Shown: positions 364 through 60,851 of the stretch, in pieces
Layout: each line of letters starts with the position of its first letter
Position numbering within the stretch: the stretch's first letter is position 1
Sequence record: LR756501.1
DNA: 64,000 bases
Strand: one strand, 5' to 3'
Program-made: the position numbers and the translations under genes
The notes under the pieces: model-generated
Told to the model about the DNA's origin: nothing
What the model saw: the letters and a program-made list of their open reading frames with translations, nothing else
Databases searched by the model: none

Positions 364-392
364 AAAAAGAGGGACTTAAGTCCCTCTTTTTT
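362..392. terminator. Bidirectional rho-independent terminator
   Basis: Inverted repeat AAAAAAGAGGGAC-TTAA-GTCCCTCTTTTTT between convergent genes. Confidence 0.85.
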
Positions 393-2508
393 ATGATCCA
401 TAACTATAATCAGATGCTCCACCTATACTATAATTAGCACCTCTCCAATCTTTATCTACCATTATTCTTCCATCGCCGTTACATCTAGGACAAGGACTTC
501 CGTCTTGTTGTCTCCCCCAACCAGAGCAGTTCCAACATTCTACTTCTTTCAAACCTTTTGTTTTAGGGGTCTTCTTAGGTTCTTCTTTTTTCTTTACTTT
601 ATCTTTAACTGCTTTAGCGATTTCTTCTTCCTCTTTCTCTTCTGGTACTCCGTGTTTTTTAATAAACTCGTCGTATAGTTTTAATTTTGGATCTTCGGAG
701 TATAATTTATCTTCTAATTCTTTTACTTTATCTGGTTCTTTCTTTGCTGCCTTTTTACCTTTTGGTTTGGCTTCAGGTTTGGCTTCTGCTTTTGCCTTAT
801 TATCTTCTTCAGCTATTTTATCTATCTCTTTCACACGTTTTGAGGTGGGAGATTCTTTTCCTATTTTTACCCCCCTTGATATTTCATCATAATAATCACC
901 CAATTCGTAATTATCTTTAAATTTTTGCTTTACAGCTTTTGGTTTACCTTCTACTGGTTCAAGTGTTGCTTCACCCTCATCGAAGTGTACCGTTATAACT
1001 CTACCGTCATCAAGTTCGAATTTAACGCTTTGTTGATTTCTACCATTTTTAATTCTACCACCTTGATAAGTACCAATTTCCCCGTTATATTTACTACCTG
1101 GATTAATATATTTAACAAGATTCTTACCTAATTTAGCATCTTCTTCCTGTAAAAATTTCATCCATTTAGCTGAGCCAGTAAGTTGTTCAGCCTTTTTCGG
1201 ATTATAATTAGCACCAATTATAGGTTTCGAAGAACCAGAAATATCTATTGGTGGAGGATAAGGGTACCCCTTGTCTGACCACGATTGATAATTTTTATAT
1301 TGGTCTGGAGTCAAAATAGGCGCTGCCTTCTTTTTCTTCTTTTCTTCTTCCTCTTCTATAATATCGTCTTCTATAGATCCTATAATATCTTCAACGTCAT
1401 CATGATTCATTTCTGTTAAATCGTCCATGTAATATTCAGCGAATAATCTTGCTTTGACCTTAGGATCACAACCATTTACTATATCTTGAATTTCTTCTTC
1501 ATATTCGTTACCTGGAAGTTCTCCTCTTTTTTGTAAATCTCTATAAATATCATCTTCCATTTTAAGCAGAGCATCCATCGGAACATTTTCTAACTCCTGT
1601 ACATCAAATAATTTCAATATTTCTTTTTTTACTGCTGGTTCTGACCCATCCAAGAAGACCTTTACTTGTTGCTTTGACGTTCCTTTTTTGTTTTTCCAAT
1701 AGTTATTAACATCGTATGGATTTTTAATAAACCATTTATCTTCCCATTTTTCTTCCTCCTTTGGATCTGGATAATCTTTCCACCAATCAGTCTCGCCAGT
1801 TCTTTTCATGTAAGCTTCGCTCTTACCAAATTCTACAATTCCTGCTCCTCCACAAAGATCACAATTACTTTTACCAGTTGACGATTTACCCGAACCACCA
1901 CATGCTGGGCATTCATCTAAAGCATCTTCTGCGTCTTTAATATCATCTTCATCTATGTCGTCTTCATCTATGTTTTTAATTGGTATAACAGGCATTCCCA
2001 TAGCTAATCCTGTTTTTGGATCAACAAAATTATTTCTATTTAATATCTTTTCTTTTTCGTCTTCGTCCCACTTTTCTTCCCCATAAGGATCAATTGATTT
2101 CATTGCTTTATCTTTTATATCGTGTAACACGTAAGCACATTTATCTAACATAAAATCAATAGTGTCTTTATGTTGTGATCTCTTATTAACCTTAAACTTT
2201 CTATCGTAAATTACTTCACCTTCTTTGTTAGTTATAGTGAGTGCGAACAATACTTCGTCATTTAAACCAAGACTTTTCTTTATTACAAAAGTATAACTCT
2301 TCTCAGTAGATTTAGCTTCCTTATTATCTTTATCTATTTCAAAATCATCACCTTTGAGCATTTTGATTTCTTCTTTAGAAAATTCATCAATAGGAAGCTT
2401 ATTAATTCTTTCTGCTTCTTCGTCTTCAAGATGTTGTTTGATTTTAGAAGGAGTCATTTTACGTTTTAACTCTTCGTTTATTTGAGAATATTTCCTGATG
2501 TAGTCCAA
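391..2508 (-). CDS. Large acidic/Lys-rich protein with two pairs of DnaJ-type CxxCxGxG zinc-finger motifs and a DPYGEEKW motif
   Basis: CPACGGSG..CDLCGGAG and CWNCSGWG..CPRCNGDG; no HPD J-domain; TTG start; N-terminus MDYIRKYSQINEE. Confidence 0.7.
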   Translation of the reverse strand: MDYIRKYSQINEELKRKMTPSKIKQHLEDEEAERINKLPIDEFSKEEIKMLKGDDFEIDKDNKEAKSTEKSYTFVIKKSLGLNDEVLFALTITNKEGEVIYDRKFKVNKRSQHKDTIDFMLDKCAYVLHDIKDKAMKSIDPYGEEKWDEDEKEKILNRNNFVDPKTGLAMGMPVIPIKNIDEDDIDEDDIKDAEDALDECPACGGSGKSSTGKSNCDLCGGAGIVEFGKSEAYMKRTGETDWWKDYPDPKEEEKWEDKWFIKNPYDVNNYWKNKKGTSKQQVKVFLDGSEPAVKKEILKLFDVQELENVPMDALLKMEDDIYRDLQKRGELPGNEYEEEIQDIVNGCDPKVKARLFAEYYMDDLTEMNHDDVEDIIGSIEDDIIEEEEEKKKKKAAPILTPDQYKNYQSWSDKGYPYPPPIDISGSSKPIIGANYNPKKAEQLTGSAKWMKFLQEEDAKLGKNLVKYINPGSKYNGEIGTYQGGRIKNGRNQQSVKFELDDGRVITVHFDEGEATLEPVEGKPKAVKQKFKDNYELGDYYDEISRGVKIGKESPTSKRVKEIDKIAEEDNKAKAEAKPEAKPKGKKAAKKEPDKVKELEDKLYSEDPKLKLYDEFIKKHGVPEEKEEEEIAKAVKDKVKKKEEPKKTPKTKGLKEVECWNCSGWGRQQDGSPCPRCNGDGRIMVDKDWRGANYSIGGASDYSYGS

Positions 2509-2585
2509 AGTGAGTATTTTAATTTGTTCTATATATTATTTTTTTACGATAGATTTTTTTATTATATTTGTAAAAATCTGGTGAG

Positions 2586-2780
2586 ATGAACAGTCCTATC
2601 AATTATCCAAACATACACGAACACTTATTGGTTGGATGGCCAAGTGGAGAATCATTTTATATGAACGGATTGCAACTATATAACTTGTATGAGAATGATT
2701 TAATAGAATACGATCCATTCAATGAATTTTGGCGTTTCGACGATAAAAACGTAGAAAAAGTAAAAATGAGAATAAAATGA
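2586..2780 (+). CDS. Hypothetical protein (paralog of next gene)
   Basis: 64-aa ORF sharing GxPSG...Y.P..FW.F.D with the next ORF. Confidence 0.6.
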   Translation: MNSPINYPNIHEHLLVGWPSGESFYMNGLQLYNLYENDLIEYDPFNEFWRFDDKNVEKVKMRIK

Positions 2781-2983
2781 ATTTGCCTATGCCTATGAAT
2801 ATTGAAGTTGAATTGACTGGATTACCAAGTGGTCAGGTTATATACATCTATTCTGCTTATTTACCTATATTATATAACTACGGATATATACTCTATCACC
2901 CAGATTATTTTTGGACATTCAAAGACGAAGACGAACATAGAATACAAAAGATAATTCAGAAAAGAGATATCTGTTTATTTTAA
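2777..2983 (+). CDS. Hypothetical protein (paralog of previous gene)
   Basis: 68-aa ORF with ATGA overlap and the shared motif. Confidence 0.6.
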   Translation: MNLPMPMNIEVELTGLPSGQVIYIYSAYLPILYNYGYILYHPDYFWTFKDEDEHRIQKIIQKRDICLF

Positions 2984-2994
2984 TATATATTAAT

Positions 2995-3731: not shown

Positions 3732-3732
3732 A

Positions 3733-13908: not shown

Positions 13909-14343
13909 TCAAAGCGCGATAATAAAGTTTACTAAAAAAATAATTAATTTTACAAGTACTGTTACGAGAATAACAGATCCAAACAACGTTATGATACCCA
14001 AAATCATATATAAAATTGCCTGATGAACGTTATATTTATATCTCAAAACAACTAAAACGTTCACTGCGTCAAGACTATCTATTTTCGAAATAGAAATAAG
14101 ATCTAACATACCAATAGATAAGAAGTATTCTTCAATAGAAGCAATGTATTTTTTAACTTCGTTGTCCAGATAGTCGTAGCCGTAGGTTTTAAGAACCTCT
14201 TGGCGTTCTTCTGTTACATTTAAAACTGTATATAATCTACCGTATTTTCTATCATATCTAAATTTATAACGTTGTGAAATGATTTCAAAATTCTCATTTA
14301 TTATCTTTCTATATCTGAAATAACCTAAAAACTTGTTGAACAT
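13909..14343 (-). CDS. Hypothetical protein with C-terminal membrane anchor
   Basis: Long hydrophobic C-terminus. Confidence 0.65.
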   Translation of the reverse strand: MFNKFLGYFRYRKIINENFEIISQRYKFRYDRKYGRLYTVLNVTEERQEVLKTYGYDYLDNEVKKYIASIEEYFLSIGMLDLISISKIDSLDAVNVLVVLRYKYNVHQAILYMILGIITLFGSVILVTVLVKLIIFLVNFIIAL

Positions 14344-19537: not shown

Positions 19538-19741
19538 CTATTTTGCCATATCAGTTCCTAACCATACTCCAGATATAAATGTTAAAGTAGATTGCCAACC
19601 CATATCATTGTTATTTGTGTTGAATATATTGAATCCGTTGAAATTAACATATATTCTATCACCTCTACCGTCAACTGATATTTGATTTTTACCAGCATTT
19701 ATTTTATTTACTATCATTCTAACTTGGTCTGTTGTTTCCAT
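19538..19741 (-). CDS. Hypothetical protein
   Basis: 67-aa ORF, coupled to upstream gene. Confidence 0.55.
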   Translation of the reverse strand: METTDQVRMIVNKINAGKNQISVDGRGDRIYVNFNGFNIFNTNNNDMGWQSTLTFISGVWLGTDMAK

Positions 19742-20157
19742 TATAAATAATTTTGTTTATGTCTTGCTATTTCGCTTTGAAGATTTTTAATCTCGTCGTC
19801 CAAAACCTTTAGTTTTTGTTGTTGAATTTTAATTTTTTCTTGTTGATCATTCACAAACACCTTTAATTTCTGAGCATTTTGTGGATCACCAGGATTATTA
19901 GGTGCTAAATCTCTTTGAGCACCTTGTAAATTAATAATCTCCTGATTAACTATTTTCTTTTGGTTATTAAGATCAAGAATTCTTTGTTGTACGTCAGTCA
20001 CTTTTAATGTAGCGTTCTTTTGAATACCAGCATTTTGTTGTTGTGGTTGGTTAGGGTTAGGTTGTTGAGCGTCAGTTTTTTCTATACCTAGATCAAGATT
20101 ATTTTTCATATCTTGTGAAGTTACCATTTCGTTAAACTGATCAAATTTAGTTATCAA
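19741..20157 (-). CDS. Gln-rich coiled-coil protein with capsid-targeting-like N-terminus
   Basis: MITKFDQFNE start; Q/N-rich coiled coil. Confidence 0.65.
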   Translation of the reverse strand: MITKFDQFNEMVTSQDMKNNLDLGIEKTDAQQPNPNQPQQQNAGIQKNATLKVTDVQQRILDLNNQKKIVNQEIINLQGAQRDLAPNNPGDPQNAQKLKVFVNDQQEKIKIQQQKLKVLDDEIKNLQSEIARHKQNYL

Positions 20158-20175: not shown

Positions 20176-20796
20176 TTATTCAACACTCAATACTGTATAT
20201 GTTTTTGAAAAAACTGGTTTTTGTTTAGAATTTGTTATAAAATCCATGTTATCATAAAAATAAAACCAAGTTAAATTCTTATTATCTTTATCTTTAAATG
20301 ATTGGAAAAAGATAGGTTTTGGTGGAGCAGGTTTTGCTGGCTGTTTTGTATTTGGATCTATTATAGTGCCACTACTTTGTTGATCTGTTAGAAGTAATGA
20401 TATCTCTTCTATATTTGATTTTAAAAGTTTACAAAATTTCTTTTTCCCTGATGCTACTACTTGTGCCTTAATATCAATATTAGGTTTCAACTTAATGTCT
20501 ATTGCTTGACCCGCTCTAAAATTCTGAATTTTTAATGTTAATGGATCAGACTGCTGCTGTGTAGTGTTACCGGAAGGTTTATATTTACTTATAAATGTTG
20601 CTATAAGATTTTCCATATTTGTTTTTTCAACTGGTGTACCTGGAGCAGGAGCTGGAACAGGTTTCTTTTTAGCAACAGGAGCTGGGGCACCAGCAGGATT
20701 TGCTGGATCAGGAGGAGCCACCTGAGTAGCTACTTGATTTAGATTAGCTGTACCTTCTGTTAATTTATCATCTATAAATTGAGTAAACTTCAACAT
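20176..20796 (-). CDS. Hypothetical putative virion protein
   Basis: MLKFTQFIDDKLTE start; Pro/Ala linker. Confidence 0.65.
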   Translation of the reverse strand: MLKFTQFIDDKLTEGTANLNQVATQVAPPDPANPAGAPAPVAKKKPVPAPAPGTPVEKTNMENLIATFISKYKPSGNTTQQQSDPLTLKIQNFRAGQAIDIKLKPNIDIKAQVVASGKKKFCKLLKSNIEEISLLLTDQQSSGTIIDPNTKQPAKPAPPKPIFFQSFKDKDNKNLTWFYFYDNMDFITNSKQKPVFSKTYTVLSVE

Positions 20797-20806: not shown

Positions 20807-22873
20807 TTAATTTTTTAGTTGTATTATTGCTTTATAAGGATCTTGATTGATACATGGTTGTGTAGTCATATATTTAGATAATGTAACTTGTCCAGATGCT
20901 GGAAAATATGTATCGAACCAACCTTGTTCAATTTCGTAAACTTCACCAAATTCCATTCTCAACATTACACTAGCAGTTGACGTTTTAACTTTATCAACAG
21001 CAACATCTTTTAAACTTCCACTATGTAAACATTTCAGTCCGAATTTATCAGCACCTCCTTTAGGACCTTGGAATGCTCCATTTGATTGTGTACTATCAAT
21101 AAAAAGATATAAAAGCCTAACGTTCTTATTTACTGGACTAGCAGCGTAGGAATTTATTCTCTGGTAACCAGTATCAGATAAATAAAGAGAATCAAAAATA
21201 TAATTATTTAATACTGGTACTGGTTTTAATTTCATAAGATTAATGGCTGCAGTATCCGAATCAGTTGTTGTGGCTCCCCAAACAGGTGTAACAAAATTAT
21301 GTGCGTTATTCTTAAAGTCAGACTTATCGTATTCTTTATCTGTTAAAATCTTTTGGAAATTTATACAACCCAAATATTTATATACTTGAGTATTTCCTTC
21401 TGACTTTATTTTAAAGACTGGGTAAAATAAAACACCGTTATGATTTACTGTATAAACAAAAAGTCCCCCTTCATTCACTATATCAGCATTACCTTGTGGC
21501 TTTATTCCCAATTTTGTTTTCTGACTAGCGAGTGCAGTAGAATTAGATAAGGCAGCGGTAGAAGCAGCGTAATTTAATACTGTTGGATCAGTCGAATATT
21601 TACCTCTAGCCCTCATAGCGTCTGTTAAATTTAACAATTTAAAAGGATCTAAAGCTTCCTCTACATCTAGAAAATTTACGAATTCGCTTTTTACAAATTC
21701 TACTTTCTTTTCCCATGATGTTTTCAATTGTGTATCTTCATCGTAATCCACTTTTCCACCAGCACCAGGATTTACTCCAACATTGTCTGGTGTTTTTTTA
21801 GTGTGAAAAATAATTCTAGATACAGCGTATTGTATCTTCTTAACACCATCTTTATTCACGTACTTAGAAGCCTCAGTTTTGTAACTTCCCTCACCAGTCC
21901 CCTTAGAAGCAAACAATTTTTGCAACTCTGTAAAATTTATTTTATTCACGTCGTCAATGCCTTGATCTTTTAACCATTGAAAAATATTTACTTTCATGGC
22001 TGGGGCACCTGGTTCAGTTAATTGATCGCCAAGCATTTGCGTTATACCAACTGATTTATTTAAACTACTAGTTATAGCTTCTTCGATTAAATCATATTCA
22101 GAGTAATTAAAATTATCCAGTAGTGGAACAATTTCATTTGTGGCTTTATCTTTTATAGTTTGTTCAGGAGAAGAAGCAAATCCTTTTAAAAGATTTTTCT
22201 CGTTATCTGTACCCTTATAAGTTGTACATTTTTTAGCTGAATCACTTTCTAAAAAAGCTTTAATGGCGTCTAAAAGTGGAATCACTTTGGTGGCTTCAGT
22301 TGAACCAGTAGTTAAAGCTGCTAGTTCTCTGAATTTATCATTTATAGCTCTTTTATCAGCACAGCATTTAATCATATTATTAGAAAAATCTAGATGTTCT
22401 TGTGCTTGATTTTTAACATCGTCCTGTGTGTTTGGATCAGCAATTATAGCTTGTAAAGTGGTAACATATTGTTTAAAATTATTCTCGTGTGAATAAATAG
22501 TATTACCATTTGAATCTATAATATAATCTATTGCTAAAATTCTACAATATTCTTGTTCATGTGGATCAGCAGTTGGTAAAGGAGGATCGTCTGGTTGTGG
22601 TGTTGGTGTAGCTGGTCCCACACCAGTTTGAAGATTTATCTCTTTTAAAGCACAAAAACGTAAAAGTCCCGCAAAATATTCATTTTCCAATTTTCTTTTA
22701 TAATATTCTAATTTACCAAGATTTATACCTTTCTGGAAATATCTCAATATTCCAAAAACTGCTCTACCAACAAGAGACTCTTTGAAACCCGTATTATTAC
22801 TAAATTCGTTTGGCACAGAAGCCTCTAATATTTTTTTAAATTCTTCAAATGGTGTTATATTCTTAAGGTCCAT
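20807..22873 (-). CDS. Large hypothetical putative virion protein
   Basis: 688 aa; MDLKNITPFEEFKKILEA start. Confidence 0.7.
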   Translation of the reverse strand: MDLKNITPFEEFKKILEASVPNEFSNNTGFKESLVGRAVFGILRYFQKGINLGKLEYYKRKLENEYFAGLLRFCALKEINLQTGVGPATPTPQPDDPPLPTADPHEQEYCRILAIDYIIDSNGNTIYSHENNFKQYVTTLQAIIADPNTQDDVKNQAQEHLDFSNNMIKCCADKRAINDKFRELAALTTGSTEATKVIPLLDAIKAFLESDSAKKCTTYKGTDNEKNLLKGFASSPEQTIKDKATNEIVPLLDNFNYSEYDLIEEAITSSLNKSVGITQMLGDQLTEPGAPAMKVNIFQWLKDQGIDDVNKINFTELQKLFASKGTGEGSYKTEASKYVNKDGVKKIQYAVSRIIFHTKKTPDNVGVNPGAGGKVDYDEDTQLKTSWEKKVEFVKSEFVNFLDVEEALDPFKLLNLTDAMRARGKYSTDPTVLNYAASTAALSNSTALASQKTKLGIKPQGNADIVNEGGLFVYTVNHNGVLFYPVFKIKSEGNTQVYKYLGCINFQKILTDKEYDKSDFKNNAHNFVTPVWGATTTDSDTAAINLMKLKPVPVLNNYIFDSLYLSDTGYQRINSYAASPVNKNVRLLYLFIDSTQSNGAFQGPKGGADKFGLKCLHSGSLKDVAVDKVKTSTASVMLRMEFGEVYEIEQGWFDTYFPASGQVTLSKYMTTQPCINQDPYKAIIQLKN

Positions 22874-22970: not shown

Positions 22971-23786
22971 TTGATAACTAAATTCAATAACTATCTCAAA
23001 GAATCCAGATTAATCAAATACATTTTACAATCAGAACAACAACAACTGATACGTGAAGGATCTGAATTTAATCAATACCAGTTAGGATTAGACAACGGTT
23101 TCGGTGGGGGGGCGTTAGGAGTGGGGTATGGATTTGCCACCGACCCAGGACTTTCCATTTATTCACCTGATTCGAATCCATATGTTGATATGTATGCACG
23201 TCAGGCTGGTACAACTAGCAGATTGATGCAGATCATCAAACAAGTTTCTAAAGAAATGATGGATGATCACGTTTTCGCTAGAAAATCTGATAGATTCTTA
23301 GAAGACATCGATGAATATAAAAATATAAAAATCCTTAGAATATTTGCTAACGAAAACTTAAAACTCAACGTTTATATTTCATTTGACTTTATGGAACAAG
23401 AATTTTTTGGTGTCTTCCGTAATTTCAACTCGAGTCACATGAAACCAACTTTTGATACTGAATTATTAGGTAATCCAGCGTTCAATTATATTGATAAAGA
23501 ATACTATCTTAAACTTAATCAATATCTTTATAAGTTAGTTTATAACTTCTTTATTCCAGAAGCAGGTATGTACAAGAATTTAAAGGAAAATTGTGTAGTT
23601 AAAGACGATAATATGGGACAATTAAGATATTTAAAAGAAGGCAAAATAGTTGAAGTACTTGGTTATAACACAGATGAAAATAACGATCCTTATATCGTTC
23701 TAAAAATAGAAGACAAGAAATTTAATATCACTGGAAATAACTATTTCTATTTCAAATATTGGTTTGACCCAATTGTAGTAAAATAA
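22971..23786 (+). CDS. Hypothetical putative virion protein
   Basis: 271 aa; MITKFNNYLKES start; preceded by TTTATATATA. Confidence 0.7.
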   Translation: MITKFNNYLKESRLIKYILQSEQQQLIREGSEFNQYQLGLDNGFGGGALGVGYGFATDPGLSIYSPDSNPYVDMYARQAGTTSRLMQIIKQVSKEMMDDHVFARKSDRFLEDIDEYKNIKILRIFANENLKLNVYISFDFMEQEFFGVFRNFNSSHMKPTFDTELLGNPAFNYIDKEYYLKLNQYLYKLVYNFFIPEAGMYKNLKENCVVKDDNMGQLRYLKEGKIVEVLGYNTDENNDPYIVLKIEDKKFNITGNNYFYFKYWFDPIVVK

Positions 23787-51577: not shown

Positions 51578-51591
51578 AATAAGATATAAAA

Positions 51592-53679: not shown

Positions 53680-53694
53680 AAAATAAATTAAAAA

Positions 53695-54843: not shown

Positions 54844-55887
54844 ATGAACAATTACGTATTAAAGTTTAATGGATATATGAAAAAAGAATCTAATGAAGTT
54901 CAAGAAGCTACTGAATGGCCTTTGTACATATCTGATGAATTAGAGAAAATCTTAAAAAGAATCATATCTAATCCTATAGCAAAAAAATTAGTAGATTGTG
55001 GTAGATCCGGATTAAGTGGCAAGAAAGTAGTTAGTGACGTGTCTTTCCTTGATGTAGAAGGAGATAGTAAAAGTGTATCTTATTTTCCTATTACAAGAAT
55101 GGGGAAACTAGAAAAAGATATATCTCCCACATATAGACCAGAAAAAGATGATTCCATTTGGAGTTCGAGGTTGAGACAAAATATGACCTGGGGGAAAATG
55201 ATTAATAAATTATTTCCTGGTGAATTTACAAACATGGACATAGATAATTTCTATAATAGGTTTCGTCCAGAAATTGATGTGAAACAAAAAGAACAAGAAA
55301 GATTTAAAGTTGTTCGCGGCGAAGATATTAGATATTGGTACCTTGCAGATCATTGGGACGGATCTTTCAACTCTTGTATGCAAGGTTCTGGATCACAACC
55401 ATTTTTCGATATTTATTGTAACAATCCAGAGAAATGTGGAATGTTAATTTATTTTAGTGAAAGAAACCCTGATAAAATTATAGGTAGAGCACTTGTTTGG
55501 AACAATTTATTAAAACCAAGTGGCGATACCGCCGAGGATAAAAATCCATATACTTTATTAGATAGGGTTTATTTTCTTAATAATCAAGGTCCTCAAATAG
55601 AGGCAGCTTTTCATAAATACGCTATAGACCATAAATGGTTATACAAAAAAGGTGATTCATTTATGATGGACGGTGTAAGAAAAACAACATCTGTTGCAAC
55701 ACGTTTGAAACCAATAGATTATACTTATTATCCATATGTAGATACTATGGCTTATTATACACCAGCAACGGGTAGGGCAGCGTCAACACCAGGTAATCCT
55801 GGTAGAGATCCAAACAATCCAGCGAGAACTTTTCCTCGTTACAGTTTAAAAAATCAAAATGGTACTAAGTCACCAGTAGATAGATAA
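54844..55887 (+). CDS. Paralog 1 of a four-gene SCM/GRAL-W/DRxY/YPY-DT family
   Basis: GEDIRYWY, NSCM, FDIYCNNPEKC, GRALVW, DRVY, YPYVDT. Confidence 0.75.
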   Translation: MNNYVLKFNGYMKKESNEVQEATEWPLYISDELEKILKRIISNPIAKKLVDCGRSGLSGKKVVSDVSFLDVEGDSKSVSYFPITRMGKLEKDISPTYRPEKDDSIWSSRLRQNMTWGKMINKLFPGEFTNMDIDNFYNRFRPEIDVKQKEQERFKVVRGEDIRYWYLADHWDGSFNSCMQGSGSQPFFDIYCNNPEKCGMLIYFSERNPDKIIGRALVWNNLLKPSGDTAEDKNPYTLLDRVYFLNNQGPQIEAAFHKYAIDHKWLYKKGDSFMMDGVRKTTSVATRLKPIDYTYYPYVDTMAYYTPATGRAASTPGNPGRDPNNPARTFPRYSLKNQNGTKSPVDR

Positions 55888-55904
55888 AAAATAAAAATTA
55901 AGAT

Positions 55905-56990
55905 ATGAGCACATTATCACATTATAAAAACTTTGTTAATGAAGCAGGAGAACCAGTGATTGAACCAGAAAAACCTAAATTCGTTAAAGGTGAAAAGAAA
56001 CTCTTGAAGTTATTTATTTCGCCTAAGCTAGAAGGATTGCTTCAGAAGATGATGAAAACGGCGGATTTTCAAGCTAAAGCTATAGCTAGTAAGATTCTAA
56101 ATATTGATCAAGAACCAGATGAAAATCTTTTCGATATATCTTATATAGATGTTGATAATGATAAGGACGATTCTCTATCTTTTATGCCAGCTCAAAGAGC
56201 TTGGTTCAAAATGGGATTTACTGATCAAGCTGATGCAGATAAAAAACCTGCACCAAATTGTGAAATGTGGACAGGTGCTGGTAGACAATCTTTAGGTGTT
56301 GGTAAGTTTATTAATAGACTTTTTGATAATTTCTCAGATAAAGCAATAGATAGTTTTGTTAAATCATATAGGGCTGAAATCGCAGCAACTATGATTTATG
56401 ATAGATTTAAATTGGTAACTGGTGAAGATATTAGATTCTGGTACGCTGAATCAAATTATTATAAAGATCCAGGTGGTGGAAAAGACGCTGGCCTTAATAA
56501 CTCTTGTATGAGGTACGACGCTAGTTCAAGAGAAGGTAAAAATTGCCAACCATATTTTGATATTTATGTTAAAAACCCAGAAAAATGTGCAATGTTAATT
56601 TTAACAAACACACAAAATAAACTTCTTGGTAGAGCACTCGTATGGTCAAATCTTAGAAAACCAACAGATAAAACATTCATGGATAGAATTTATGTTTTCA
56701 AACAATCTGACGCTGAATTATTTAAGAAATACGCTATGGAAAAAGGTTGGTTATATAAATACGATCAACAAGCTTACGACGCTTCATATGTAGAAAACGG
56801 ACAAAGAGTTAATAAATCAGTTGCTCTTCAATTAAAACCCGCTGAATATAAAACTTATCCTTTCATGGATAGTTTAAAATATTACAATCCAGGTACTGGT
56901 AGATTGGGTTCAGATCCAGGTAACCCAGTTGAAGGAATGAAAAGACTAAAACTCGAAGGCGGTGGAGGACAAGCCGGTAGAGTAGACTAA
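55905..56990 (+). CDS. Paralog 2 of the same family
   Basis: GEDIRFWY, NSCM, FDIYVKNPEKC, GRALVW, MDRIY, YPFMDS. Confidence 0.75.
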   Translation: MSTLSHYKNFVNEAGEPVIEPEKPKFVKGEKKLLKLFISPKLEGLLQKMMKTADFQAKAIASKILNIDQEPDENLFDISYIDVDNDKDDSLSFMPAQRAWFKMGFTDQADADKKPAPNCEMWTGAGRQSLGVGKFINRLFDNFSDKAIDSFVKSYRAEIAATMIYDRFKLVTGEDIRFWYAESNYYKDPGGGKDAGLNNSCMRYDASSREGKNCQPYFDIYVKNPEKCAMLILTNTQNKLLGRALVWSNLRKPTDKTFMDRIYVFKQSDAELFKKYAMEKGWLYKYDQQAYDASYVENGQRVNKSVALQLKPAEYKTYPFMDSLKYYNPGTGRLGSDPGNPVEGMKRLKLEGGGGQAGRVD

Positions 56991-56999
56991 AAATAATAT

Positions 57000-58067
57000 T
57001 TGATAGTGGGACTTAAAAATTTTAATGGTTATGTATATGAAAGTGATATTAACGTGAAAGAACTTCCGATGTTTTTTTCGCCTAAACTTACTGAACTATT
57101 AAATTCAATAGATTCTAAAATATCAAAAGAATTATTAGATTTACCAAAGTCTGATGTTAAATTTCAAAATTCTTACGCTGATCTAACTAACGATATTGAT
57201 ACTATTAGTGTTCTACCAGCAAATAGAGTTGGTAGATTAGCTGGCGTAACAGAAGAAGATCTAGTTAATCCAAAGCCAAATAGTCCAGTATGGGGTGAAA
57301 AAGGAAGACAATCAATGAGAATTGGTGCTTTCGTCACAAGAACTTTACCAAAATATGCTGGAACAAAAGACCTTGAGAATTTTGTACATCTCATTAAAGG
57401 TAAATTAGATCAGGATAATTACGAATTAAAGATGGTAAGAGGTGAAGAGATACGTAAATGGTACCACGTTAAATCTTATTATAATCCTCATCCAGGTATG
57501 GAAGAAGCACCAGAAGAGGGAGTACTTGATGTTAGAACTCCTCTTATGAAGTCTTGTCTTAAACAACCAGAAAAACAATCATTTTTTGATATTTATTGCC
57601 AAAATCCCGAACAAGTTGGCATGTTAATCATGTTAAATAAAGAAGGCAAATTGGTAGCAAGAGCAATAATATGGTTTGATTGTTTTGTTGTGGATATACC
57701 AGGCAATCCAACAAAGGGTGTATTAATGGATAGGATTTATTATACAAACGAATCAGATGTAAATATCTTTATTGATTACGCTAAGGAGCGTGGTTGGTGG
57801 TACAAACCAAATCAGGCAAAAGAGGTTTATACTTTTGTAAAGGACGGACAAGTATGTGATAAAGGTATTACAACCAGATTAAAAAATCACGGTGTATTTG
57901 CTCGTTACCCATATATAGATACAATGTGTTTTTACACACCAGACACAGGAAGATTATCAACAATTAGAGGTAAACCCACTAAAAGTCCATTTACTGGTGA
58001 AACAATGGAAAGGTTCCAATTACATAAAGCCAACGGTGGTACAAAAAGACTCGCCAGAGACAAATAA
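57000..58067 (+). CDS. Paralog 3 of the same family
   Basis: GEEIRKWY, KSCL, FDIYCQNPEQ, ARAIIW, MDRIY, YPYIDT; GTG start. Confidence 0.75.
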   Translation: MIVGLKNFNGYVYESDINVKELPMFFSPKLTELLNSIDSKISKELLDLPKSDVKFQNSYADLTNDIDTISVLPANRVGRLAGVTEEDLVNPKPNSPVWGEKGRQSMRIGAFVTRTLPKYAGTKDLENFVHLIKGKLDQDNYELKMVRGEEIRKWYHVKSYYNPHPGMEEAPEEGVLDVRTPLMKSCLKQPEKQSFFDIYCQNPEQVGMLIMLNKEGKLVARAIIWFDCFVVDIPGNPTKGVLMDRIYYTNESDVNIFIDYAKERGWWYKPNQAKEVYTFVKDGQVCDKGITTRLKNHGVFARYPYIDTMCFYTPDTGRLSTIRGKPTKSPFTGETMERFQLHKANGGTKRLARDK

Positions 58068-58083
58068 AATAAACAAATTTTAA

Positions 58084-59109
58084 ATGGCCCTGTATAACTA
58101 TAACGGATTTTTATTTGAAGCAGACGATAAAGAAAAAAAGAAAATCCCACTTTATATTTCAGAAACATTATTATCTATATTATCTAATATAGATTCACCT
58201 ATAGCTAAAAAACTTATAGAATTAGATGCCACTAAACAGCCAACAGTTAAAGGTCATAATAAATTTGAAATATCTTATTTAGATTGTGATAGAACAAAAA
58301 AAGATAAAGAAGATAAAATATCTTTTATGCCCGCGGCTAAGGCTTCTGAAGTACCTGGAATATTGAGCAAAGTAGGAAGTATGGAAGAAATTATGCTTCC
58401 ATGTAATGATTGTTATAACTCTAAGTTAAGACAAGAAATGTCTGTTGGTAAAATAGTAAATAGATTATTCCCAGATACTTACAAACAAGTTGAGATTGAA
58501 AAGTTTGTAAATGATTTCAAAGCTGAAATGGGTAAAGCTTCAGCTAAATTCAAATTAGTTGAAGGAGAAGAAATAAGATATTGTTATCTTGAAAGTAATT
58601 ACGAGAATACGTCACAAGGTGATCTTAATAGTTCTTGCATGAAACACGAATACGCACAAAAATATTTAGATATTTATTGTAAGAATCCAGATAAATGTAA
58701 GTTATTAGTATTAATGAGTGATAAAAACGATAAAAAGATTAAAGGGAGAGCATTGGTTTGGATGGGATTACGCAAACCAACAGGTAAAGTTTACATGGAT
58801 AGAATTTACGTTTTAAATTACGCAGACCAAAAATTATATATTGATTACGCTATCGAGCACGATTGGTTGCATAAAGCACAACAAGTGATGCACGACGCGT
58901 CTTATATAGAGAACGGTAAAAGGGTTCACGCCTCAGTAGCCATTCAATTAAATCCTGCTATGTATGATTATTACCCATCAATGGACACTCTTGCTTATTA
59001 CACTCCAAGTACTGGTAGGTTAGGAAGTAACGCTGGAAATTACGTTAAAGGACATCCACGTTACACACTTAACAGTGCGGAAGGCGGAGCTACAAAATTA
59101 GACAAATAA
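58084..59109 (+). CDS. Paralog 4 of the same family
   Basis: GEEIRYCY, SSCM, LDIYCKNPDKC, GRALVW, MDRIY, YPSMDT. Confidence 0.75.
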   Translation: MALYNYNGFLFEADDKEKKKIPLYISETLLSILSNIDSPIAKKLIELDATKQPTVKGHNKFEISYLDCDRTKKDKEDKISFMPAAKASEVPGILSKVGSMEEIMLPCNDCYNSKLRQEMSVGKIVNRLFPDTYKQVEIEKFVNDFKAEMGKASAKFKLVEGEEIRYCYLESNYENTSQGDLNSSCMKHEYAQKYLDIYCKNPDKCKLLVLMSDKNDKKIKGRALVWMGLRKPTGKVYMDRIYVLNYADQKLYIDYAIEHDWLHKAQQVMHDASYIENGKRVHASVAIQLNPAMYDYYPSMDTLAYYTPSTGRLGSNAGNYVKGHPRYTLNSAEGGATKLDK

Positions 59110-59413: not shown

Positions 59414-59455
59414 GCAATATATTTTTAAATATATATTGGGAAAAAAGCTGATTTT

Positions 59456-59692
59456 ATGACTACCATAGACAACATTTTTTACATTTTCATCGACGAACAG
59501 AACGAAAAATGTACTATTAAACTCGTTCAAGACTTTGACTGGAAAATCACGCCCATCGCTGGAACCCTTCCAGACGATATAATATCTTATTCCAATAAGT
59601 TTGATATTGATGATATTATGGATGATCTCAGAAGTAGATTCGATTACGTAGAAGAAATCTCCTATAACGATATCGATGATTACATGTCGTAA
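59456..59692 (+). CDS. Hypothetical acidic protein
   Basis: 78-aa ORF preceded by TAAATATATA. Confidence 0.55.
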   Translation: MTTIDNIFYIFIDEQNEKCTIKLVQDFDWKITPIAGTLPDDIISYSNKFDIDDIMDDLRSRFDYVEEISYNDIDDYMS

Positions 59693-59786
59693 TTGGAAAA
59701 AAATCAGTTTTTTCTCTTAATATATATCTTTGTATTGAATCAATTTTTTACTAAATGTAAAAGATACGAAAAAATAAAACGAAGAT

Positions 59787-60668
59787 ATGAATAACTTAAA
59801 CGAATACAAATTATTCAAAGGGACAAATAAACCACGAACAAAGTATAGTTTGAAACCACCAACTGATGATACCCCATATTACGGATATGATTACAATAAA
59901 AGTCCGGAGCAAGATCCAGATGAACCATTTCTTAGTGTGAATAAAGATAAATATTTCACTAAAAAGAACGACGATGTTGTTAAACAACAGAGAGAATTAA
60001 ATAGCACAATTGGAATTGCTAAATTAAAAGAGTTTGGATTTGTTGATGAAGATCTTGAAAAATTAAAAACTTTAGGATTTATAAGTAATCCATCATACAA
60101 CAAAGATGAGAATTCTTGGCATTTTTATGTTAGTTTACAAAATTCTGAATACGGAATAGGTTTTTCTTATTATTTGCCTGAAAAAGATTTCATTGTTAGT
60201 TCACCAGATTTTGTTGATTATAAAAAATCTCATAAAAAAAGATTCACTAATGCTAGTGACGCTGTAAATTGGGTATTGGAAGTCAGAAACTCGATAAAAA
60301 CTAGAAGAAGAGAAATGGGAAGAAGAGTTACAGAATCAAATGAACCAGGTTTAGACGTTTTTAATTTCAAAGGAATTGATAAGAAATTAAACAACTTAAT
60401 CGAGTTTGATGATTTTGATAAAACTTTAAAACCAAAACAACAAAAATCAACAAAAAGAACTGAAGTTGGTTTGGATATTTTAAATGAAAGTGTAGTTAAC
60501 AAAATTACATTAGATGTACCTTTATTTATAAGAATGTTAGAATACGCTAAGGAAGACGCCAAAACAGATATGGATTTACACAAAGTAACAGAAAATATAC
60601 TTGATATGAGTGCAGACGGTAAAATGTTAACAATGGCAAATTACGATAGTATAGTAAAAATAAAATAG
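59787..60668 (+). CDS. Multi-module hypothetical putative virion protein
   Basis: MNNLNEY start; internal VTES and LNES junctions; C-terminal ITLDVPLFIRMLEYAKED module. Confidence 0.65.
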   Translation: MNNLNEYKLFKGTNKPRTKYSLKPPTDDTPYYGYDYNKSPEQDPDEPFLSVNKDKYFTKKNDDVVKQQRELNSTIGIAKLKEFGFVDEDLEKLKTLGFISNPSYNKDENSWHFYVSLQNSEYGIGFSYYLPEKDFIVSSPDFVDYKKSHKKRFTNASDAVNWVLEVRNSIKTRRREMGRRVTESNEPGLDVFNFKGIDKKLNNLIEFDDFDKTLKPKQQKSTKRTEVGLDILNESVVNKITLDVPLFIRMLEYAKEDAKTDMDLHKVTENILDMSADGKMLTMANYDSIVKIK

Positions 60669-60674
60669 AATACT

Positions 60675-60851
60675 ATGAAACACGTGAAGAAATTTACAAT
60701 AAATGAGGGTCAAGGACCAGATGAAATAGAAACTGATTTAAACGCCATAGCTCAAGATGTTTGGTTATATATTATGGATACTTACCATCTGAATGAAAGA
60801 CAGGTACAAATAGTTATAGATAAATTAAGTGAAAATTACAGATTGATGTAA
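60675..60851 (+). CDS. Small putative virion protein (58 aa, not in ORF track)
   Basis: Translated by hand as MKHVKKFTINEGQGPDEIETDLNAIAQDVW...YRLM*. Confidence 0.65.
   Translation: MKHVKKFTINEGQGPDEIETDLNAIAQDVWLYIMDTYHLNERQVQIVIDKLSENYRLM

What the first reader, a model, noticed from the sequence alone, without database searches (positions are those of the whole stretch)
391..60851. About 20 genes share a T4 capsid-targeting-like N-terminus, suggesting a large packaged-protein arsenal
Seen in sequence: otherwise unrelated ORFs start with M-x-(K)-F/Y-x-x-F/Y...(I/L/F/V)-x-E. Examples are MITKFDQFNE (19741..20157), MITKFNNYLKES (22971), MIKKYEDYSKNE (34697..35527), MITKYNIFEN (37392..39923), MISKWDDFKRLNE, MRIKRLNE, MAKLKMFENF, MSTLSHYKNFVNEA, MALYNYNGFLFEA, MKHVKKFTINEG and MDYIRKYSQINEE. 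Established: T4 internal proteins use a 10-aa capsid targeting sequence (MKTYQEFIAE) that gp21 cleaves after Glu. Inference: these are head-packaged proteins injected with the DNA, far more than T4's handful. Most are of unknown function, so they are candidate anti-defence or host-takeover effectors.
Basis: partly seen in the sequence, partly recalled or inferred. Interest (0 to 1): 0.82.

Follow-up and report, generated by a model that had tools for sequence, protein, structure and literature searches.

The report
Capsid-address tags on 100+ phage proteins
In the largest known phage genome (735 kb), at least 111 otherwise unrelated proteins begin with one short tag that matches both phage T4's capsid-targeting peptide and the repeat unit of this phage's own head scaffold, so the phage probably loads an unusually large set of enzymes into its capsid, though no protein-level evidence exists yet.

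Summary
The window is 100% identical to LR756501.1, the 735-kb Lac Pavin "Mahaphage". The N-terminal motif is real: M-x-x-K-[FY]-x-[QE]-[FY]-[ILV]-N-E-[AES]. In the window 9-10 genes carry it robustly, four of them tandem paralogs, and about 6-9 carry looser variants. Genome-wide, 111 of 967 ORFs pass a 0.5% false-positive threshold (4.8 expected). Selection acts on the peptide, not the DNA. The tag is an add-on before diverse enzyme domains and is unstructured in an AlphaFold model.

Five independent sequence lines support the T4 capsid-targeting reading:
- A matrix trained only on this phage ranks T4 ipIII and ipII first among 205 T4 ORFs.
- Its four conserved columns have the spacing of T4's mapped targeting and processing residues.
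- A T4-type portal, gp21-like protease-scaffold fusion and gp23 capsid gene lie just past the window.
- The scaffold part is about 13 tandem 14-residue repeats of the same pattern.
- Related Mahaphages with such repeats carry the tag; Tenacibaculum phage PTm1, whose scaffold repeat differs, showed none in the 29 kb examined.

Packaging, cleavage and injection remain unshown. A second pervasive motif, DPYGEExW, is unexplained.

The parts
22971..23786 (+). Tagged gene, 271 aa, TTG start, N-terminus MITKFNNYLKES. No known family.
   Evidence: Matrix score 15.5, above the 99.9% null. No Pfam or PHROG match.
26990..27313 (-). Tagged gene, 107 aa, N-terminus MAKLKMFENFGNEN.
   Evidence: Matrix score 15.8, above the 99.9% null. 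No Pfam match.
34697..35527 (-). Tagged gene, 276 aa, N-terminus MIKKYEDYSKNE. The element TTTTTTAATATATAG ends 5 nt before the ATG.
   Evidence: Matrix score 14.3. Upstream sequence. No Pfam match.
37392..39923 (-). Tagged gene, 843 aa, N-terminus MITKYNIFENVDE. It also holds four DPYGEExW motifs, one of them 10 residues from the C-terminus. The TATATAG element ends 5 nt before the ATG.
   Evidence: Matrix score 14.6. DPYGEE positions. No Pfam or PHROG match.
54844..55887 (+). Tagged paralog 1 of 4, 347 aa, N-terminus MNNYVLKFNGYMKKES.
   Evidence: Matrix score 10.3. Paralogy shown by BLASTP E 1e-46 to 1e-66.
55905..56990 (+). Tagged paralog 2 of 4, 361 aa, N-terminus MSTLSHYKNFVNEA. The tag is followed by a variable linker and a folded domain with a weakly GNAT-like part.
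   Evidence: Matrix score 15.7. 99 homologs, none named. In 40 aligned homologs the tag columns are 90-98% conserved. AlphaFold pLDDT is 88.7 overall, with residues 1-24 below 50. Best Foldseek hit has E 9e-3, to GNAT folds.
57000..58067 (+). Tagged paralog 3 of 4, 355 aa, TTG start, N-terminus MIVGLKNFNGYVYES.
   Evidence: Matrix score 12.2. Paralogy.
58084..59109 (+). Tagged paralog 4 of 4, 341 aa, N-terminus MALYNYNGFLFEA.
   Evidence: Matrix score 15.1. Paralogy.
20176..20796 (-). Tagged gene, 206 aa, N-terminus MLKFTQFIDDKLTEG. This is a variant with the Glu further downstream.
   Evidence: Matrix score 10.0, above the 99.5% null. No Pfam match.
391..2508 (-). Probable tagged gene, 705 aa, TTG start, N-terminus MDYIRKYSQINEE. 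It has a DPYGEEKW at residue 140 and a weak DnaJ-type zinc finger at the C-terminus.
   Evidence: Matrix score 5.3, above the 99% null. Pfam DnaJ_CXXCXGXG 8.6e-5, below the cut-off. DPYGEE position.
19741..20157 (-). Loose variant, 138 aa, TTG start, N-terminus MITKFDQFNE. The spacing is one residue shorter.
   Evidence: Matrix score 2.8, above the 95% null only. The regex matches.
25962..26288 (-). Loose variant, 108 aa, N-terminus MISKWDDFKRLNE. The spacing before L-N-E is longer.
   Evidence: Not scored by the ungapped matrix (-0.9). Matches the gapped regex.
26653..26988 (-). Doubtful variant, 111 aa, N-terminus MRIKRLNE. It has only the L-N-E end and no aromatic pair.
   Evidence: Sequence read. 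Not among the matrix hits.
36800..37399 (-). Loose variant on an HD-domain phosphohydrolase, 199 aa from the ATG at 37399, N-terminus MIKEFSKYNFMDF.
   Evidence: Pfam HD 3.8e-7. Matrix score 2.2.
20807..22873 (-). Loose variant, 688 aa, N-terminus MDLKNITPFEEFKKILEA.
   Evidence: Matrix score 2.1, above the 95% null. The regex matches.
60675..60851 (+). Loose variant, 58 aa, N-terminus MKHVKKFTINEG. It was too short for the genome-wide set.
   Evidence: Sequence read. No Pfam match.
13909..14343 (-). Loose variant, 144 aa, N-terminus MFNKFLGYFRYRKIINENFE.
   Evidence: Matches the gapped regex. No Pfam match.
63559..64000 (+). Context: the start of a T4 gp4-like head-completion gene, cut by the window end. 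It is the first gene of the T4-type head module. The portal, the protease-scaffold and the gp23-type capsid gene follow at record 71969-78166, which is 0.9 to 7.1 kb beyond the window.
   Evidence: phmmer against T4 gp4, 2.2e-21. Pfam Portal_T4 1.1e-69, Peptidase_S77 6.7e-5 and Gp23 1.9e-25 for the downstream genes.

Best explanation
The shared N-terminus is a capsid-targeting propeptide of the T4 kind. It is a 10-14-residue add-on tag with the pattern aromatic-x-x-aromatic-[ILV]-x-Glu.

Proposed mechanism (all inferred):
- The tag imitates one 14-residue repeat of the phage's own prohead scaffold.
- The tagged protein therefore co-assembles with the scaffold core while the head shell forms.
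- The gp21-family prohead protease, fused to that scaffold, then cuts after the Glu. It cuts the scaffold repeats at the same site.
- This frees the mature protein inside the head. It stays there with the DNA and presumably enters the host cell at infection.

Shown here:
- The tag exists and is under peptide-level selection.
- It is modular, detached from the folded domain and strictly N-terminal.
- It matches the T4 CTS and the scaffold repeats.
- A T4-type head module is present.

Inferred: binding to the scaffold, cleavage, presence in particles, injection, and any role after injection.
For: 1. A distinct sub-population of genes carries the tag.
- 111 of 967 ORFs pass, against 4.8 expected from interior windows and a mean of 10.7 from position-preserving shuffles.
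- The aromatic pair peaks sharply at residue 5: 82 genes against 12.8 expected.

2. Selection is on the peptide. Synonymous codons at the tag columns follow genome usage, and F and Y interchange.

3. The tag is modular.
- Carriers are unrelated by BLAST apart from one paralog family.
- They span many Pfam enzyme families.
- In CoaE and a DHH protein the tag sits directly before the normal start of the domain.

4. In 40 homologs of the window paralogs (26-86% identity):
- The two aromatic columns are each kept in 39 of 40 sequences.
- The following hydrophobic column is kept in 38 of 39.
- The Glu is kept in 36 of 40, with Asp in the other 4.
- A hypervariable, indel-rich linker follows.
- AlphaFold leaves residues 1-24 below pLDDT 50 on a domain otherwise near 90.

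5. Match to T4.
- The matrix trained only on this phage ranks T4 ipIII and ipII first and second of 205 ORFs in 100 kb of T4. Their score is 13.7, the 99.9% null is 11.4 and the next ORF scores 8.9.
- The T4 literature maps targeting to CTS residues 4 and 7 and processing to residues 8 and 10, and says gp21 cuts after L/I-x-E (PMC9026906). This is the spacing of matrix columns 0, 3, 4 and 6.

6. A T4-type head module lies just beyond the window.
- Portal_T4 scores 1e-69 and Gp23 scores 2e-25.
- Between them is an 807-aa protein with a Peptidase_S77-like N-terminal domain.
- That domain shares 22 invariant columns with T4 gp21, including H85 and S140 in T4 numbering.
- The same fusion is annotated in phage PTm1 as 'prohead core scaffolding protein and protease'.

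7. The scaffold repeats the motif.
- Residues about 304-485 of the 807-aa protein are about 13 tandem 14-residue repeats of [KDN]-[YF]-[ST]-E-Y-[IV]-A-E-[NH]-[LV]-D-[KN]-[ST]-I.
- It holds 5 of the 28 best interior matrix matches in the whole proteome.
- It also holds 5 of the 39 interior phi-N-E-[AS] sites (P=5e-7).

8. Distribution.
- Mahaphages LR756504 and LR756500 have the same scaffold repeats.
- LR756504 has tags on 9 of 280 sampled ORFs, against 1.4 expected.
- PTm1, whose scaffold repeat differs, has none in the 29 kb examined.

9. About half of the tagged genes (50 of 111, against 21% of other genes) have an ATATATA element upstream. This element also precedes the portal and protease-scaffold genes.

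10. None of the proteins with T4 homologs outside the head interior carries the tag: terminase-like, gp32-like, gp5-like, portal and capsid protein.
Against: - There is no protein-level evidence of any kind: no particle proteome, no observed N-termini.
- At least 11% of all genes is far beyond any known packaged set.
- The recognisable carriers are housekeeping-type enzymes (PPK2, CoaE, DeoC aldolase, transketolase-like, glycosyltransferase) with no obvious need to travel in a capsid.
- About 40% of hits lack Glu at the aligned column, for example CoaE with I-N-K, so cleavage cannot be universal.
- The protease match is below Pfam's gathering score (22.9 against 27 bits), and a sequence search of the PDB found nothing.
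- T4's own scaffold gp22 lacks the aromatic-pair repeats, so the scaffold-mimicry step has no experimental precedent.
- T4 Alt, gp24 and ipI, which are also targeted and cleaved, do not score with the matrix.
- The promoter element is not specific to head genes. It lies upstream of about 23% of all genes.
Confidence: 0.6

Rival explanations
1. The tag is a short linear motif that docks many phage proteins onto some other shared partner or compartment in the infected cell. Candidates include a chaperone, a replication or translation factory, or a vault-like shell made by the major-vault-protein homolog in the same window. The likeness to the T4 CTS and to the scaffold repeats would then only reflect a common amphipathic-helix pattern.
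For: - The cargo list looks cytoplasmic and metabolic.
- 11% of the proteome is more typical of a localisation or hub signal than of capsid cargo.
- A second pervasive motif, DPYGEExW, co-occurs with the tag (odds ratio 4.6) and is not explained by the capsid model.
- The phage encodes an MVP homolog, the tail of a DnaK-like ORF and a DnaJ-type zinc finger.
Against: - It does not explain why the best interior copies of the motif sit as tandem repeats in the protease-scaffold protein.
- It does not explain why the motif ends in the phi-x-Glu-[Ala/Ser] signature of gp21-type cleavage, or why T4's known CTS proteins are the top T4 matches.
- No candidate receptor was identified.
Confidence: 0.17
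2. The tag is a substrate site for the gp21-like protease, or another Glu-specific protease, used to switch proteins on or off late in infection without any packaging.
For: The conserved phi-x-Glu end and the enrichment of phi-N-E-[AS] in the protease-scaffold protein. The near-invariant Glu in the paralog family.
Against: - In T4 the protease acts inside the prohead (PMC9026906).
- The most conserved tag columns are the aromatic pair, which T4 genetics assigns to targeting rather than to processing.
- About 40% of tags lack the Glu at the aligned column.
Confidence: 0.08
3. The pattern is a by-product of translation start constraints in an AT-rich, Shine-Dalgarno-less, partly leaderless genome. 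On this view the selection is on the mRNA 5' end, not on a protein signal.
For: - K, I and N are enriched at residues 2-4 in all genes.
- There is no Shine-Dalgarno sequence upstream.
- The tag is 6.5-fold associated with an ATATATA element ending 5 nt before the start codon.
Against: - Synonymous codons vary as in the rest of the genome, and Phe and Tyr interchange.
- Position-preserving shuffles give 10.7 hits, not 111.
- 88 of the 111 tagged genes are not of the leaderless class.
- Equally AT-rich relatives showed none: PTm1 and the sampled Lak-B4 region.
- The motif recurs in the interior of the scaffold protein.
Confidence: 0.03
4. The resemblance is chance, or comes from hidden paralogy or wrongly called starts.
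For: Four of the window examples are paralogs. Several starts are TTG or GTG. Some quoted examples are weak.
Against: - 82 genes pass a 0.1% false-positive threshold.
- The carriers span many unrelated Pfam families.
- The motif is kept in 159 of 1176 ORFs of related metagenomic contigs and across a family down to 26% identity.
- 9 of the 28 best 'interior' matches lie right after an in-frame Met, so they are really N-terminal.
Confidence: 0.02

Closest known systems
[quoted passage not shown]
   Same: - Strictly N-terminal, 10-14 residues, appended to unrelated proteins.
- Two aromatic positions three residues apart, then Ile/Leu-x-Glu followed by Ala/Ser.
- T4 ipII and ipIII are the top T4 matches to this phage's matrix.
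- The genome has the homologous portal, protease and capsid genes in T4 order.
   Different: - At least 111 carriers instead of a handful, including large enzymes of up to 1233 aa.
- Asn is preferred before the Glu.
- The register is shifted by one residue in most genes, with the Glu at residue 11 or 13.
- The protease is fused to the scaffold, and the scaffold itself is a tandem array of CTS-like units, which T4 gp22 is not.
- Host phylum is Bacteroidota.
- Nothing has been verified at the protein level.
Propeptides of head and ejection proteins in phiKZ, 201phi2-1 and SPN3US giant phages
   Same: Many different proteins (about 50) are packed in the head. Paralog clusters of packaged proteins occur. 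N-termini are conserved between diverged paralogs. A prohead protease of the same superfamily cuts after Glu (PMC5694885).
   Different: Their propeptides are mostly longer than 100 residues, with an A/S/G-x-E cleavage motif and no single shared short tag. Here there is one short common tag with phi-x-E.
Cargo-loading peptides of encapsulins and encapsulation peptides of bacterial microcompartments
   Same: A short, detachable, amphipathic terminal peptide on otherwise unrelated enzymes acts as an address label for a protein shell (my own knowledge, not tested here).
   Different: Those shells are not virus heads and the peptide is not removed. No encapsulin or microcompartment shell gene was looked for or seen. 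Here the motif ends in a protease site and matches a phage scaffold.
Scaffold-mediated cargo incorporation in other tailed phages
   Same: Cargo enters the procapsid by associating with the internal scaffold before the DNA (general knowledge).
   Different: No other system is known to me in which the cargo tag copies a tandem repeat unit of the scaffold. This point is an inference here.

Membership tests
T4-type capsid targeting sequence (CTS) propeptide | Short propeptide (10-19 residues) at the extreme N-terminus | tested here: met
   - The aligned Glu falls at residue 10-14 in 60 of 111 tags.
- The motif frequency peaks at residues 4-7 and falls to background by residue 12.
- 9 of the 28 best interior matches follow an in-frame Met.
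- The length range is from PMC9026906.
T4-type capsid targeting sequence (CTS) propeptide | Targeting residues at positions i and i+3 and processing residues at i+4 and i+6 (T4 residues 4, 7, 8 and 10), ending in L/I-x-Glu | tested here: met
   Matrix columns 0 and 3 are Phe/Tyr, column 4 is Ile/Leu/Val and column 6 is Glu. T4 ipII and ipIII score 13.7, the top of 205 T4 ORFs. The positions are from PMC9026906.
T4-type capsid targeting sequence (CTS) propeptide | Modular: attached to otherwise unrelated proteins | tested here: met
   No BLAST relation among carriers except one paralog family. 32 different Pfam families occur among the carriers. The tag is an add-on before the CoaE P-loop and before the DHH domain.
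T4-type capsid targeting sequence (CTS) propeptide | The genome encodes a gp21-family prohead protease and a scaffold core | tested here: met
   - phmmer against T4 gp21 gives 0.004.
- Pfam Peptidase_S77 gives 6.7e-5, which is below the gathering score.
- 22 columns are invariant with T4 gp21, including H85 and S140-S141-R142.
- The gene sits between the Portal_T4 and Gp23 genes.
- The PTm1 ortholog is annotated as scaffold plus protease.
- A sequence search of the PDB found nothing.
T4-type capsid targeting sequence (CTS) propeptide | The propeptide is cleaved after the Glu during head maturation | not testable with these tools
   There are only indirect signs. The same phi-N-E-[AS] tetrapeptide is concentrated in the protease-scaffold protein (5 of 39 interior sites, P=5e-7). 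A phi-x-E-N site is conserved in the capsid-protein N-terminal region of three Mahaphages.
T4-type capsid targeting sequence (CTS) propeptide | The tagged proteins are physically inside the capsid and leave it at infection | not testable with these tools
   No particle proteome exists for this uncultured phage. No paper in the library links a CTS to huge phages.
phiKZ-type long head-protein propeptides | Propeptides longer than about 100 residues with an A/S/G-x-E cleavage motif | tested here: not met
   The tags are 10-14 residues and have Ile/Leu/Val, not Ala/Ser/Gly, two residues before the Glu. The definition is from PMC5694885.
Cargo peptides of non-viral protein shells (encapsulin, microcompartment, vault) | A dedicated non-capsid shell protein to which the peptide binds | tested here: inconclusive
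   A major-vault-protein homolog is present in the window (Pfam MVP_shoulder 1.2e-28; PDB MVP 6e-20). Nothing links it to the tag. Encapsulin and microcompartment shell genes were not searched for.

The most novel reading that the evidence does not exclude
The N-terminal tag, perhaps together with the DPYGEExW motif, is an address label for a second, non-capsid protein shell that the phage builds in the infected cell. An example would be a vault-like particle made from the major-vault-protein homolog encoded in this same window. The phage would then assemble an enzyme-filled organelle rather than, or besides, a loaded capsid.
Probability: 0.05. Interest if true: 0.95.

Novelty: new variant of a known kind. 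Interest (0 to 1): 0.8.

Why it matters
If the tags work as in T4, this phage ships on the order of a hundred different proteins with its DNA, many of them enzymes. That would be a pre-made starter proteome far beyond T4's handful or the roughly 50 head proteins of phiKZ-like phages. It would change how the gene content of huge phages is read: many 'auxiliary metabolic genes' would be virion cargo.

The finding also suggests a simple mechanism for cargo loading that descriptive work can test. The tag copies one repeat unit of the scaffold and carries the scaffold's own cleavage site. It also points to a possible origin of the T4 CTS from a scaffold repeat.

Practically, the tag gives a sequence-only way to predict packaged proteins in uncultured T4-superfamily megaphages. 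The four-residue rule (aromatic, aromatic, Ile/Leu, Glu) can be checked against any particle-fraction metaproteome.

Tried and rejected
- **Start-site model:** A model based only on upstream A-richness truncated many genes, including tagged ones. I dropped it for the first-start rule, which gives 94.6% coding density.
- **First matrix:** The first matrix included Met1, which inflated N-terminal scores. I rebuilt it without Met1.
- **DNA-level repeat or cassette boundary:** Rejected for the tag because synonymous sites vary freely. DPYGEExW does show skewed codon choice (CCT, TAC, GGT), which I could not explain.
- **PDB sequence search with the protease domain:** No hit.
- **Pfam and PHROGs on the window's tagged proteins:** Almost nothing.
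- **Foldseek on the paralog model:** Only weak GNAT-fold matches, best E 9e-3 and none at or below 1e-3. I do not call the family an acetyltransferase.
- **First control around the LR756504 portal:** 0 hits. This at first suggested the tag was private to the 735-kb lineage. Wider sampling corrected it to 9 of 280 ORFs.
- **Capsid-protein alignment with T4 gp23:** Too weak at the N-terminus to place the cleavage site.
- **Literature searches:** DPYGEE, and a CTS in huge phages or megaphages, found nothing relevant.
- **T4 coverage:** Only 100 of the 169 kb of T4 were scanned.

Full report
**What the window is.** The window is 100% identical to LR756501.1 (also LR756503.1), an unannotated 735,411-bp 'uncultured phage'. 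Window position equals record position minus 7060. This is the 735-kb genome of Al-Shayeb et al. 2020, the largest phage genome then known. It belongs to the 'Mahaphage' clade and is predicted to infect Bacteroidetes (PMC7162821). G+C is about 30%. Start codons are preceded by A-rich leaders without a Shine-Dalgarno sequence. There are no tRNA genes in the window.

**The observation in the window.**
- All quoted N-termini are present at the stated ORFs.
- Compared with the interior of the same 81 proteins, K[FYW]xx[FYW] starts within the first ten residues in 9 genes against 0.86 expected. The fuller pattern with phi-x-Glu does so in 11 genes against 2.0 expected.
- Only the four tandem genes at 54844-59109 are related to each other. 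No other tagged pair gives a BLASTP hit.
- With the genome-trained matrix, 9 window genes pass the 99.5% null quantile and one more passes 99%. 19 of 82 pass 95%, against 4.1 expected.
- So 'about 20' is lenient. About 10 are solid, about 15 is the excess over chance, and some quoted cases are weak (MRIKRLNE, MISKWDDFKRLNE, MITKFDQFNE).

**Genome-wide test.** I read the whole record in 16 separate pieces and called 967 non-overlapping ORFs of at least 60 aa, covering 94.6% of the sequence.
- An aromatic pair three residues apart starts at residue 5 in 82 genes, against 12.8 expected from the interior rate.
- K[FYW]xx[FYW] starts at residue 4 in 34 genes, against 1.2 expected.
- Glu is enriched at residues 9-14.
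- A 10-column matrix that never includes Met1 converges on K/N-[FY]-x-[QE]-[FY]-[ILV]-[NK]-E-[AES]-x.
- It finds 111 genes above the 99.5% quantile of interior windows (4.8 expected) and 82 above the 99.9% quantile (1 expected).
- Shuffling residues among genes within each N-terminal position keeps any general start-of-gene composition bias. It gives a mean of 10.7 hits and a maximum of 19 in 200 trials.
- The carriers are therefore a distinct class, about 11% of the genes, spread over the whole genome.

**A peptide signal and an add-on.**
- At the conserved columns the synonymous codons occur in genome-typical proportions (TTT/TTC, TAT/TAC, AAT/AAC, GAA/GAG), and Phe and Tyr interchange. Selection therefore acts on the peptide.
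- Scanning all 111 carriers against Pfam gives 32 different families. Each occurs once, apart from DUF7919, which occurs twice. They include PPK2, CoaE, a polyA/CCA polymerase, SAM methyltransferase, DeoC aldolase, radical SAM, HD, GNAT, glycosyltransferase, deaminase, DHH and a transketolase-like domain. Most carriers match nothing.
- In the CoaE homolog the tag directly precedes the P-loop that normally opens the enzyme. In the DHH protein it precedes the domain by about 20 residues.
- For the window's paralog family, a database search gave 99 unnamed homologs.
- In a 40-sequence alignment (26-86% identity) the two aromatic columns are each kept in 39 of 40 sequences and the hydrophobic column in 38 of 39. 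The Glu is kept in 36 of 40, with 4 Asp.
- The next 15 columns are hypervariable and full of indels. The conserved domain starts near residue 30.
- AlphaFold models the domain at pLDDT about 90 and leaves residues 1-24 below 50.
- Foldseek finds only weak GNAT-fold similarity, with the best E at 9e-3.

**Comparison with T4, made with T4's own record.** A literature search showed the accession AF158101. I read 100 of its 169 kb.
- The matrix trained only on the 735-kb phage ranks ipIII and ipII first and second among 205 T4 ORFs. They score 13.7, the 99.9% null is 11.4 and the next ORF scores 8.9.
- ipI shares the aromatic pair only. Alt and gp21 to gp24 do not score.
- The T4 literature states that IP propeptides are 10-19 residues long and that the first 10 residues of IPIII suffice for targeting.
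- It maps targeting mainly to residues 4 and 7 and processing to residues 8 and 10. It says gp21 cuts after L/I-x-E, first seen as a Glu-Ala bond (PMC9026906).
- Those four positions have exactly the spacing of the four most conserved matrix columns (0, 3, 4 and 6).

**The head module next door.** T4 head proteins used as local queries find homologs immediately past the window's right end:
- A gp4-like gene at record 70619-71140. Its start is window 63559.
- The portal at 71969-73795 (Pfam Portal_T4, 1e-69).
- An 807-aa protein at 73913-76336.
- The capsid protein at 76340-78166 (Pfam Gp23, 2e-25).

The N-terminal 170 residues of the 807-aa protein resemble the gp21 protease.
- Pfam Peptidase_S77 scores 6.7e-5, which is below the gathering score.
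- 22 columns are invariant with T4 gp21 and two relatives, including H85 and S140 in T4 numbering. To my knowledge these are the catalytic His and Ser.
- A phi-x-E sits at residue 9, where T4 gp21 has its own candidate autocleavage site.
- The orthologous fusion in Tenacibaculum phage PTm1 is annotated 'prohead core scaffolding protein and protease'.

**The scaffold is made of the motif.** This is the strongest new evidence.
- I listed the best interior matches to the tag matrix across the whole proteome. Five of the 28 fall in this one protein, and 9 others lie right after an in-frame Met, so they are really N-terminal.
- Residues about 304-485 of the 807-aa protein are about 13 tandem 14-residue repeats of [KDN]-[YF]-[ST]-E-Y-[IV]-A-E-[NH]-[LV]-D-[KN]-[ST]-I. 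This is aromatic-x-x-aromatic-phi-x-Glu again, at two-heptad periodicity.
- The protein has 6.1 phi-x-E sites per 100 residues, against about 2-3.5 in its neighbours.
- It holds 5 of the proteome's 39 interior phi-N-E-[AS] sites (P=5e-7).
- The capsid protein has a phi-x-E-N-V-G-Y site near residue 68, and LR756504 keeps the same site. LR756500 has L-Y-E-N at the matching place. T4 gp23 loses 65 residues (PMC5694885). The alignment is too weak to equate the sites.

From this I infer the mechanism. A tag is one scaffold repeat grafted onto a cargo protein. It joins the scaffold bundle and is released when the protease cuts every repeat after its Glu.

**Distribution.**
- The scaffold regions of Mahaphages LR756504 (636 kb) and LR756500 (462 kb) carry the same repeats. 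PTm1 has a different repeat, and T4 gp22 has only I-A-E-type sites.
- In 191.5 kb of LR756504, 9 of 280 ORFs carry the tag, against 1.4 expected.
- Distant homologs of the window paralogs, from contigs of about 630 kb, also keep it.
- In 29 kb of PTm1 and 41 kb of Lak-B4, both equally AT-rich, nothing passes the threshold.
- In 120 stretches of related IMG/VR contigs, 159 of 1176 ORFs carry it, against 5.9 expected.
- So the tag is a Mahaphage trait that tracks the repeat-type scaffold, and it is greatly expanded in the 735-kb lineage. This also rules out a generic AT-rich N-terminal bias.

**Expression hint.**
- An ATATATA element lies within 80 nt upstream of about 23% of genes and falls into two position classes.
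- In one class it ends 5 nt before the start codon, which suggests leaderless mRNAs. That class is 6.5-fold enriched among tagged genes.
- In the other it ends about 20-24 nt upstream. That class includes the portal and protease-scaffold genes.
- Sharing the element with head genes fits co-expression but does not prove it.

**Plausibility and caveats.**
- T4 packs about 1,100 IP molecules plus 40 Alt molecules (table in PMC9026906). SPN3US packs more than 40 MDa of ejection proteins with 240 kb of DNA (abstract of PMC7411985).
That is tens of copies of each of about 110 species, similar to Alt.
- The number of carriers and their housekeeping-like enzymes are still surprising.
- About 40% of tags lack Glu at the aligned column.
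- Nothing here shows a protein in a particle.
- I put the capsid-targeting reading at 0.6.

**Rivals.**
- *Docking motif for another partner or compartment (0.17).* This fits the cargo list and the unexplained second motif. It does not explain the scaffold repeats, the protease-type ending or the T4 match.
- *Protease-controlled activation without packaging (0.08).* This fits the Glu but not the dominance of the aromatic pair.
- *A translation-start artefact (0.03), and chance or paralogy (0.02).* The controls above contradict both.

**A second motif.**
- DPYGEExW occurs 105 times in 90 proteins, against 0.14 expected from composition. D-P-Y-G-E-E is invariant, and Trp is kept in 99 of the 105.
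- 38 copies lie 8-12 residues from the C-terminus and 21 lie just after the N-terminal tag. The rest sit between domains, with up to four copies per protein.
- It co-occurs with the tag (odds ratio 4.6, P=2e-8).
- It is frequent in the related IMG/VR contigs but absent from LR756504, PTm1, Lak-B4 and T4.
- Its codon choice is skewed.
- Y-G-E fits phi-x-Glu, so it could be a further processing site, but I have no evidence for that.
- A 207-aa protein (L013:43760-44383) combines three scaffold-type repeats with a C-terminal DPYGEEDW.

**Novelty.**
- No paper in the library links a capsid-targeting sequence to huge phages or megaphages, or mentions DPYGEE in phages.
- A 2026 review of jumbo phages mentions neither targeting sequences nor Mahaphages.
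- The kind is known: CTS propeptides removed by a gp21-type protease. The scale, the host phylum and the scaffold built of CTS-like repeats are new, so I rate this a new variant of a known kind.

Noticed in passing
window 37392-39923 (4 copies), 4254-4790 (C-terminal copy), 391-2508 (residue 140), 40968-41489 (residue 114); genome-wide in L001-L016: A second pervasive motif, DPYGEExW.
- It occurs 105 times in 90 proteins, against 0.14 expected.
- 38 copies lie 8-12 residues before the stop codon, 21 lie just after the N-terminal tag and the rest lie between domains.
- It co-occurs with the tag (odds ratio 4.6).
- Its codon choice is skewed (CCT, TAC, GGT).
- It is abundant in related IMG/VR contigs but absent from LR756504, PTm1, Lak-B4 and T4.
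- Function unknown.
   Followed up: partly
window 35528-35547 and 39924-39943 (upstream of the two minus-strand starts); also before 2995: A TTTTT(T)AATATATAG element.
- In 36 genes it ends exactly 5 nt before the start codon, which suggests leaderless transcripts.
- A second class ends about 20-24 nt upstream, including before the portal and protease-scaffold genes.
- ATATATA lies within 60 nt upstream of 218 of 967 genes, against 12 expected.
- It is probably a phage promoter. Its timing class is unknown.
   Followed up: partly
window 10119-12548 (-): An 809-aa homolog of the eukaryotic major vault protein: Pfam MVP_shoulder 1.2e-28 and Vault_3 4.9e-11, PDB MVP 6e-20 over residues 445-725. 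Viral MVPs have been described in gut phages (bioRxiv 10.1101/2023.11.10.566534). This one is in a lake megaphage.
   Followed up: partly
L002:25913-28336 (record 73913-76336, 2.9 kb beyond the window end): The prohead protease is fused to a scaffold. The scaffold's core is about 13 tandem 14-residue repeats, followed by a Q/A/G-rich and acidic low-complexity stretch. The same repeat array occurs in LR756504 and, in degenerate form, in LR756500. PTm1 has a different repeat.
   Followed up: yes
L013:43760-44383 (record 619760-620383, +): A 207-aa protein with a Gly/Ser-rich middle, three scaffold-type 14-residue repeats and a C-terminal DPYGEEDWSV. It may be a second scaffold-associated protein.
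   Followed up: no
window 43136-43666 (-), 22-363 (+), 29007-31220 (+): Cell-like genes without the tag: a full translation initiation factor IF-3 (IF3_N 4e-25, IF3_C 5e-29), what looks by eye like the C-terminal end of a DnaK-like ORF running off the window start (not searched), and a PAS / histidine kinase / receiver hybrid sensor.
   Followed up: partly
window 46233-54780 (+): Three consecutive proteins of 1550, 695 and 361 aa share internal fibronectin-III-like repeats (BLASTP E down to 1e-15; Pfam fn3 3.9e-6). They lie directly upstream of the four tagged paralogs. They are likely fibre or decoration proteins.
   Followed up: no
window 2995-3474 (+), 6362-6805 (-), 31519-32469 (-), 44865-45974 (-), 40006-40971 (+): Untagged enzymes among the tagged genes: NADAR domain (6e-26), dUTPase (2e-28), glycoside hydrolase family 16 (4e-16), M16 insulinase-type peptidase (3e-11) and a 5'-3' exonuclease (2e-14).
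   Followed up: no
L015:27854-29026, L013:33226-35493, L013:47865-48410: T4 terminase large subunit gp17 matches three separate ORFs far apart in the genome, of 390, 755 and 181 aa (E 2e-35, 6e-29 and 3e-15). They could be paralogs or a gene in pieces. I did not examine this.
   Followed up: no
L142 (Lak-B4, record 397481-438827): With the standard code only 59% of the Lak-B4 stretch is covered by ORFs. With TAG read as sense the figure is 83%. This agrees with the published alternative coding of Lak phages (PMC8346664 abstract). N-terminal surveys there therefore need the other code.
   Followed up: no
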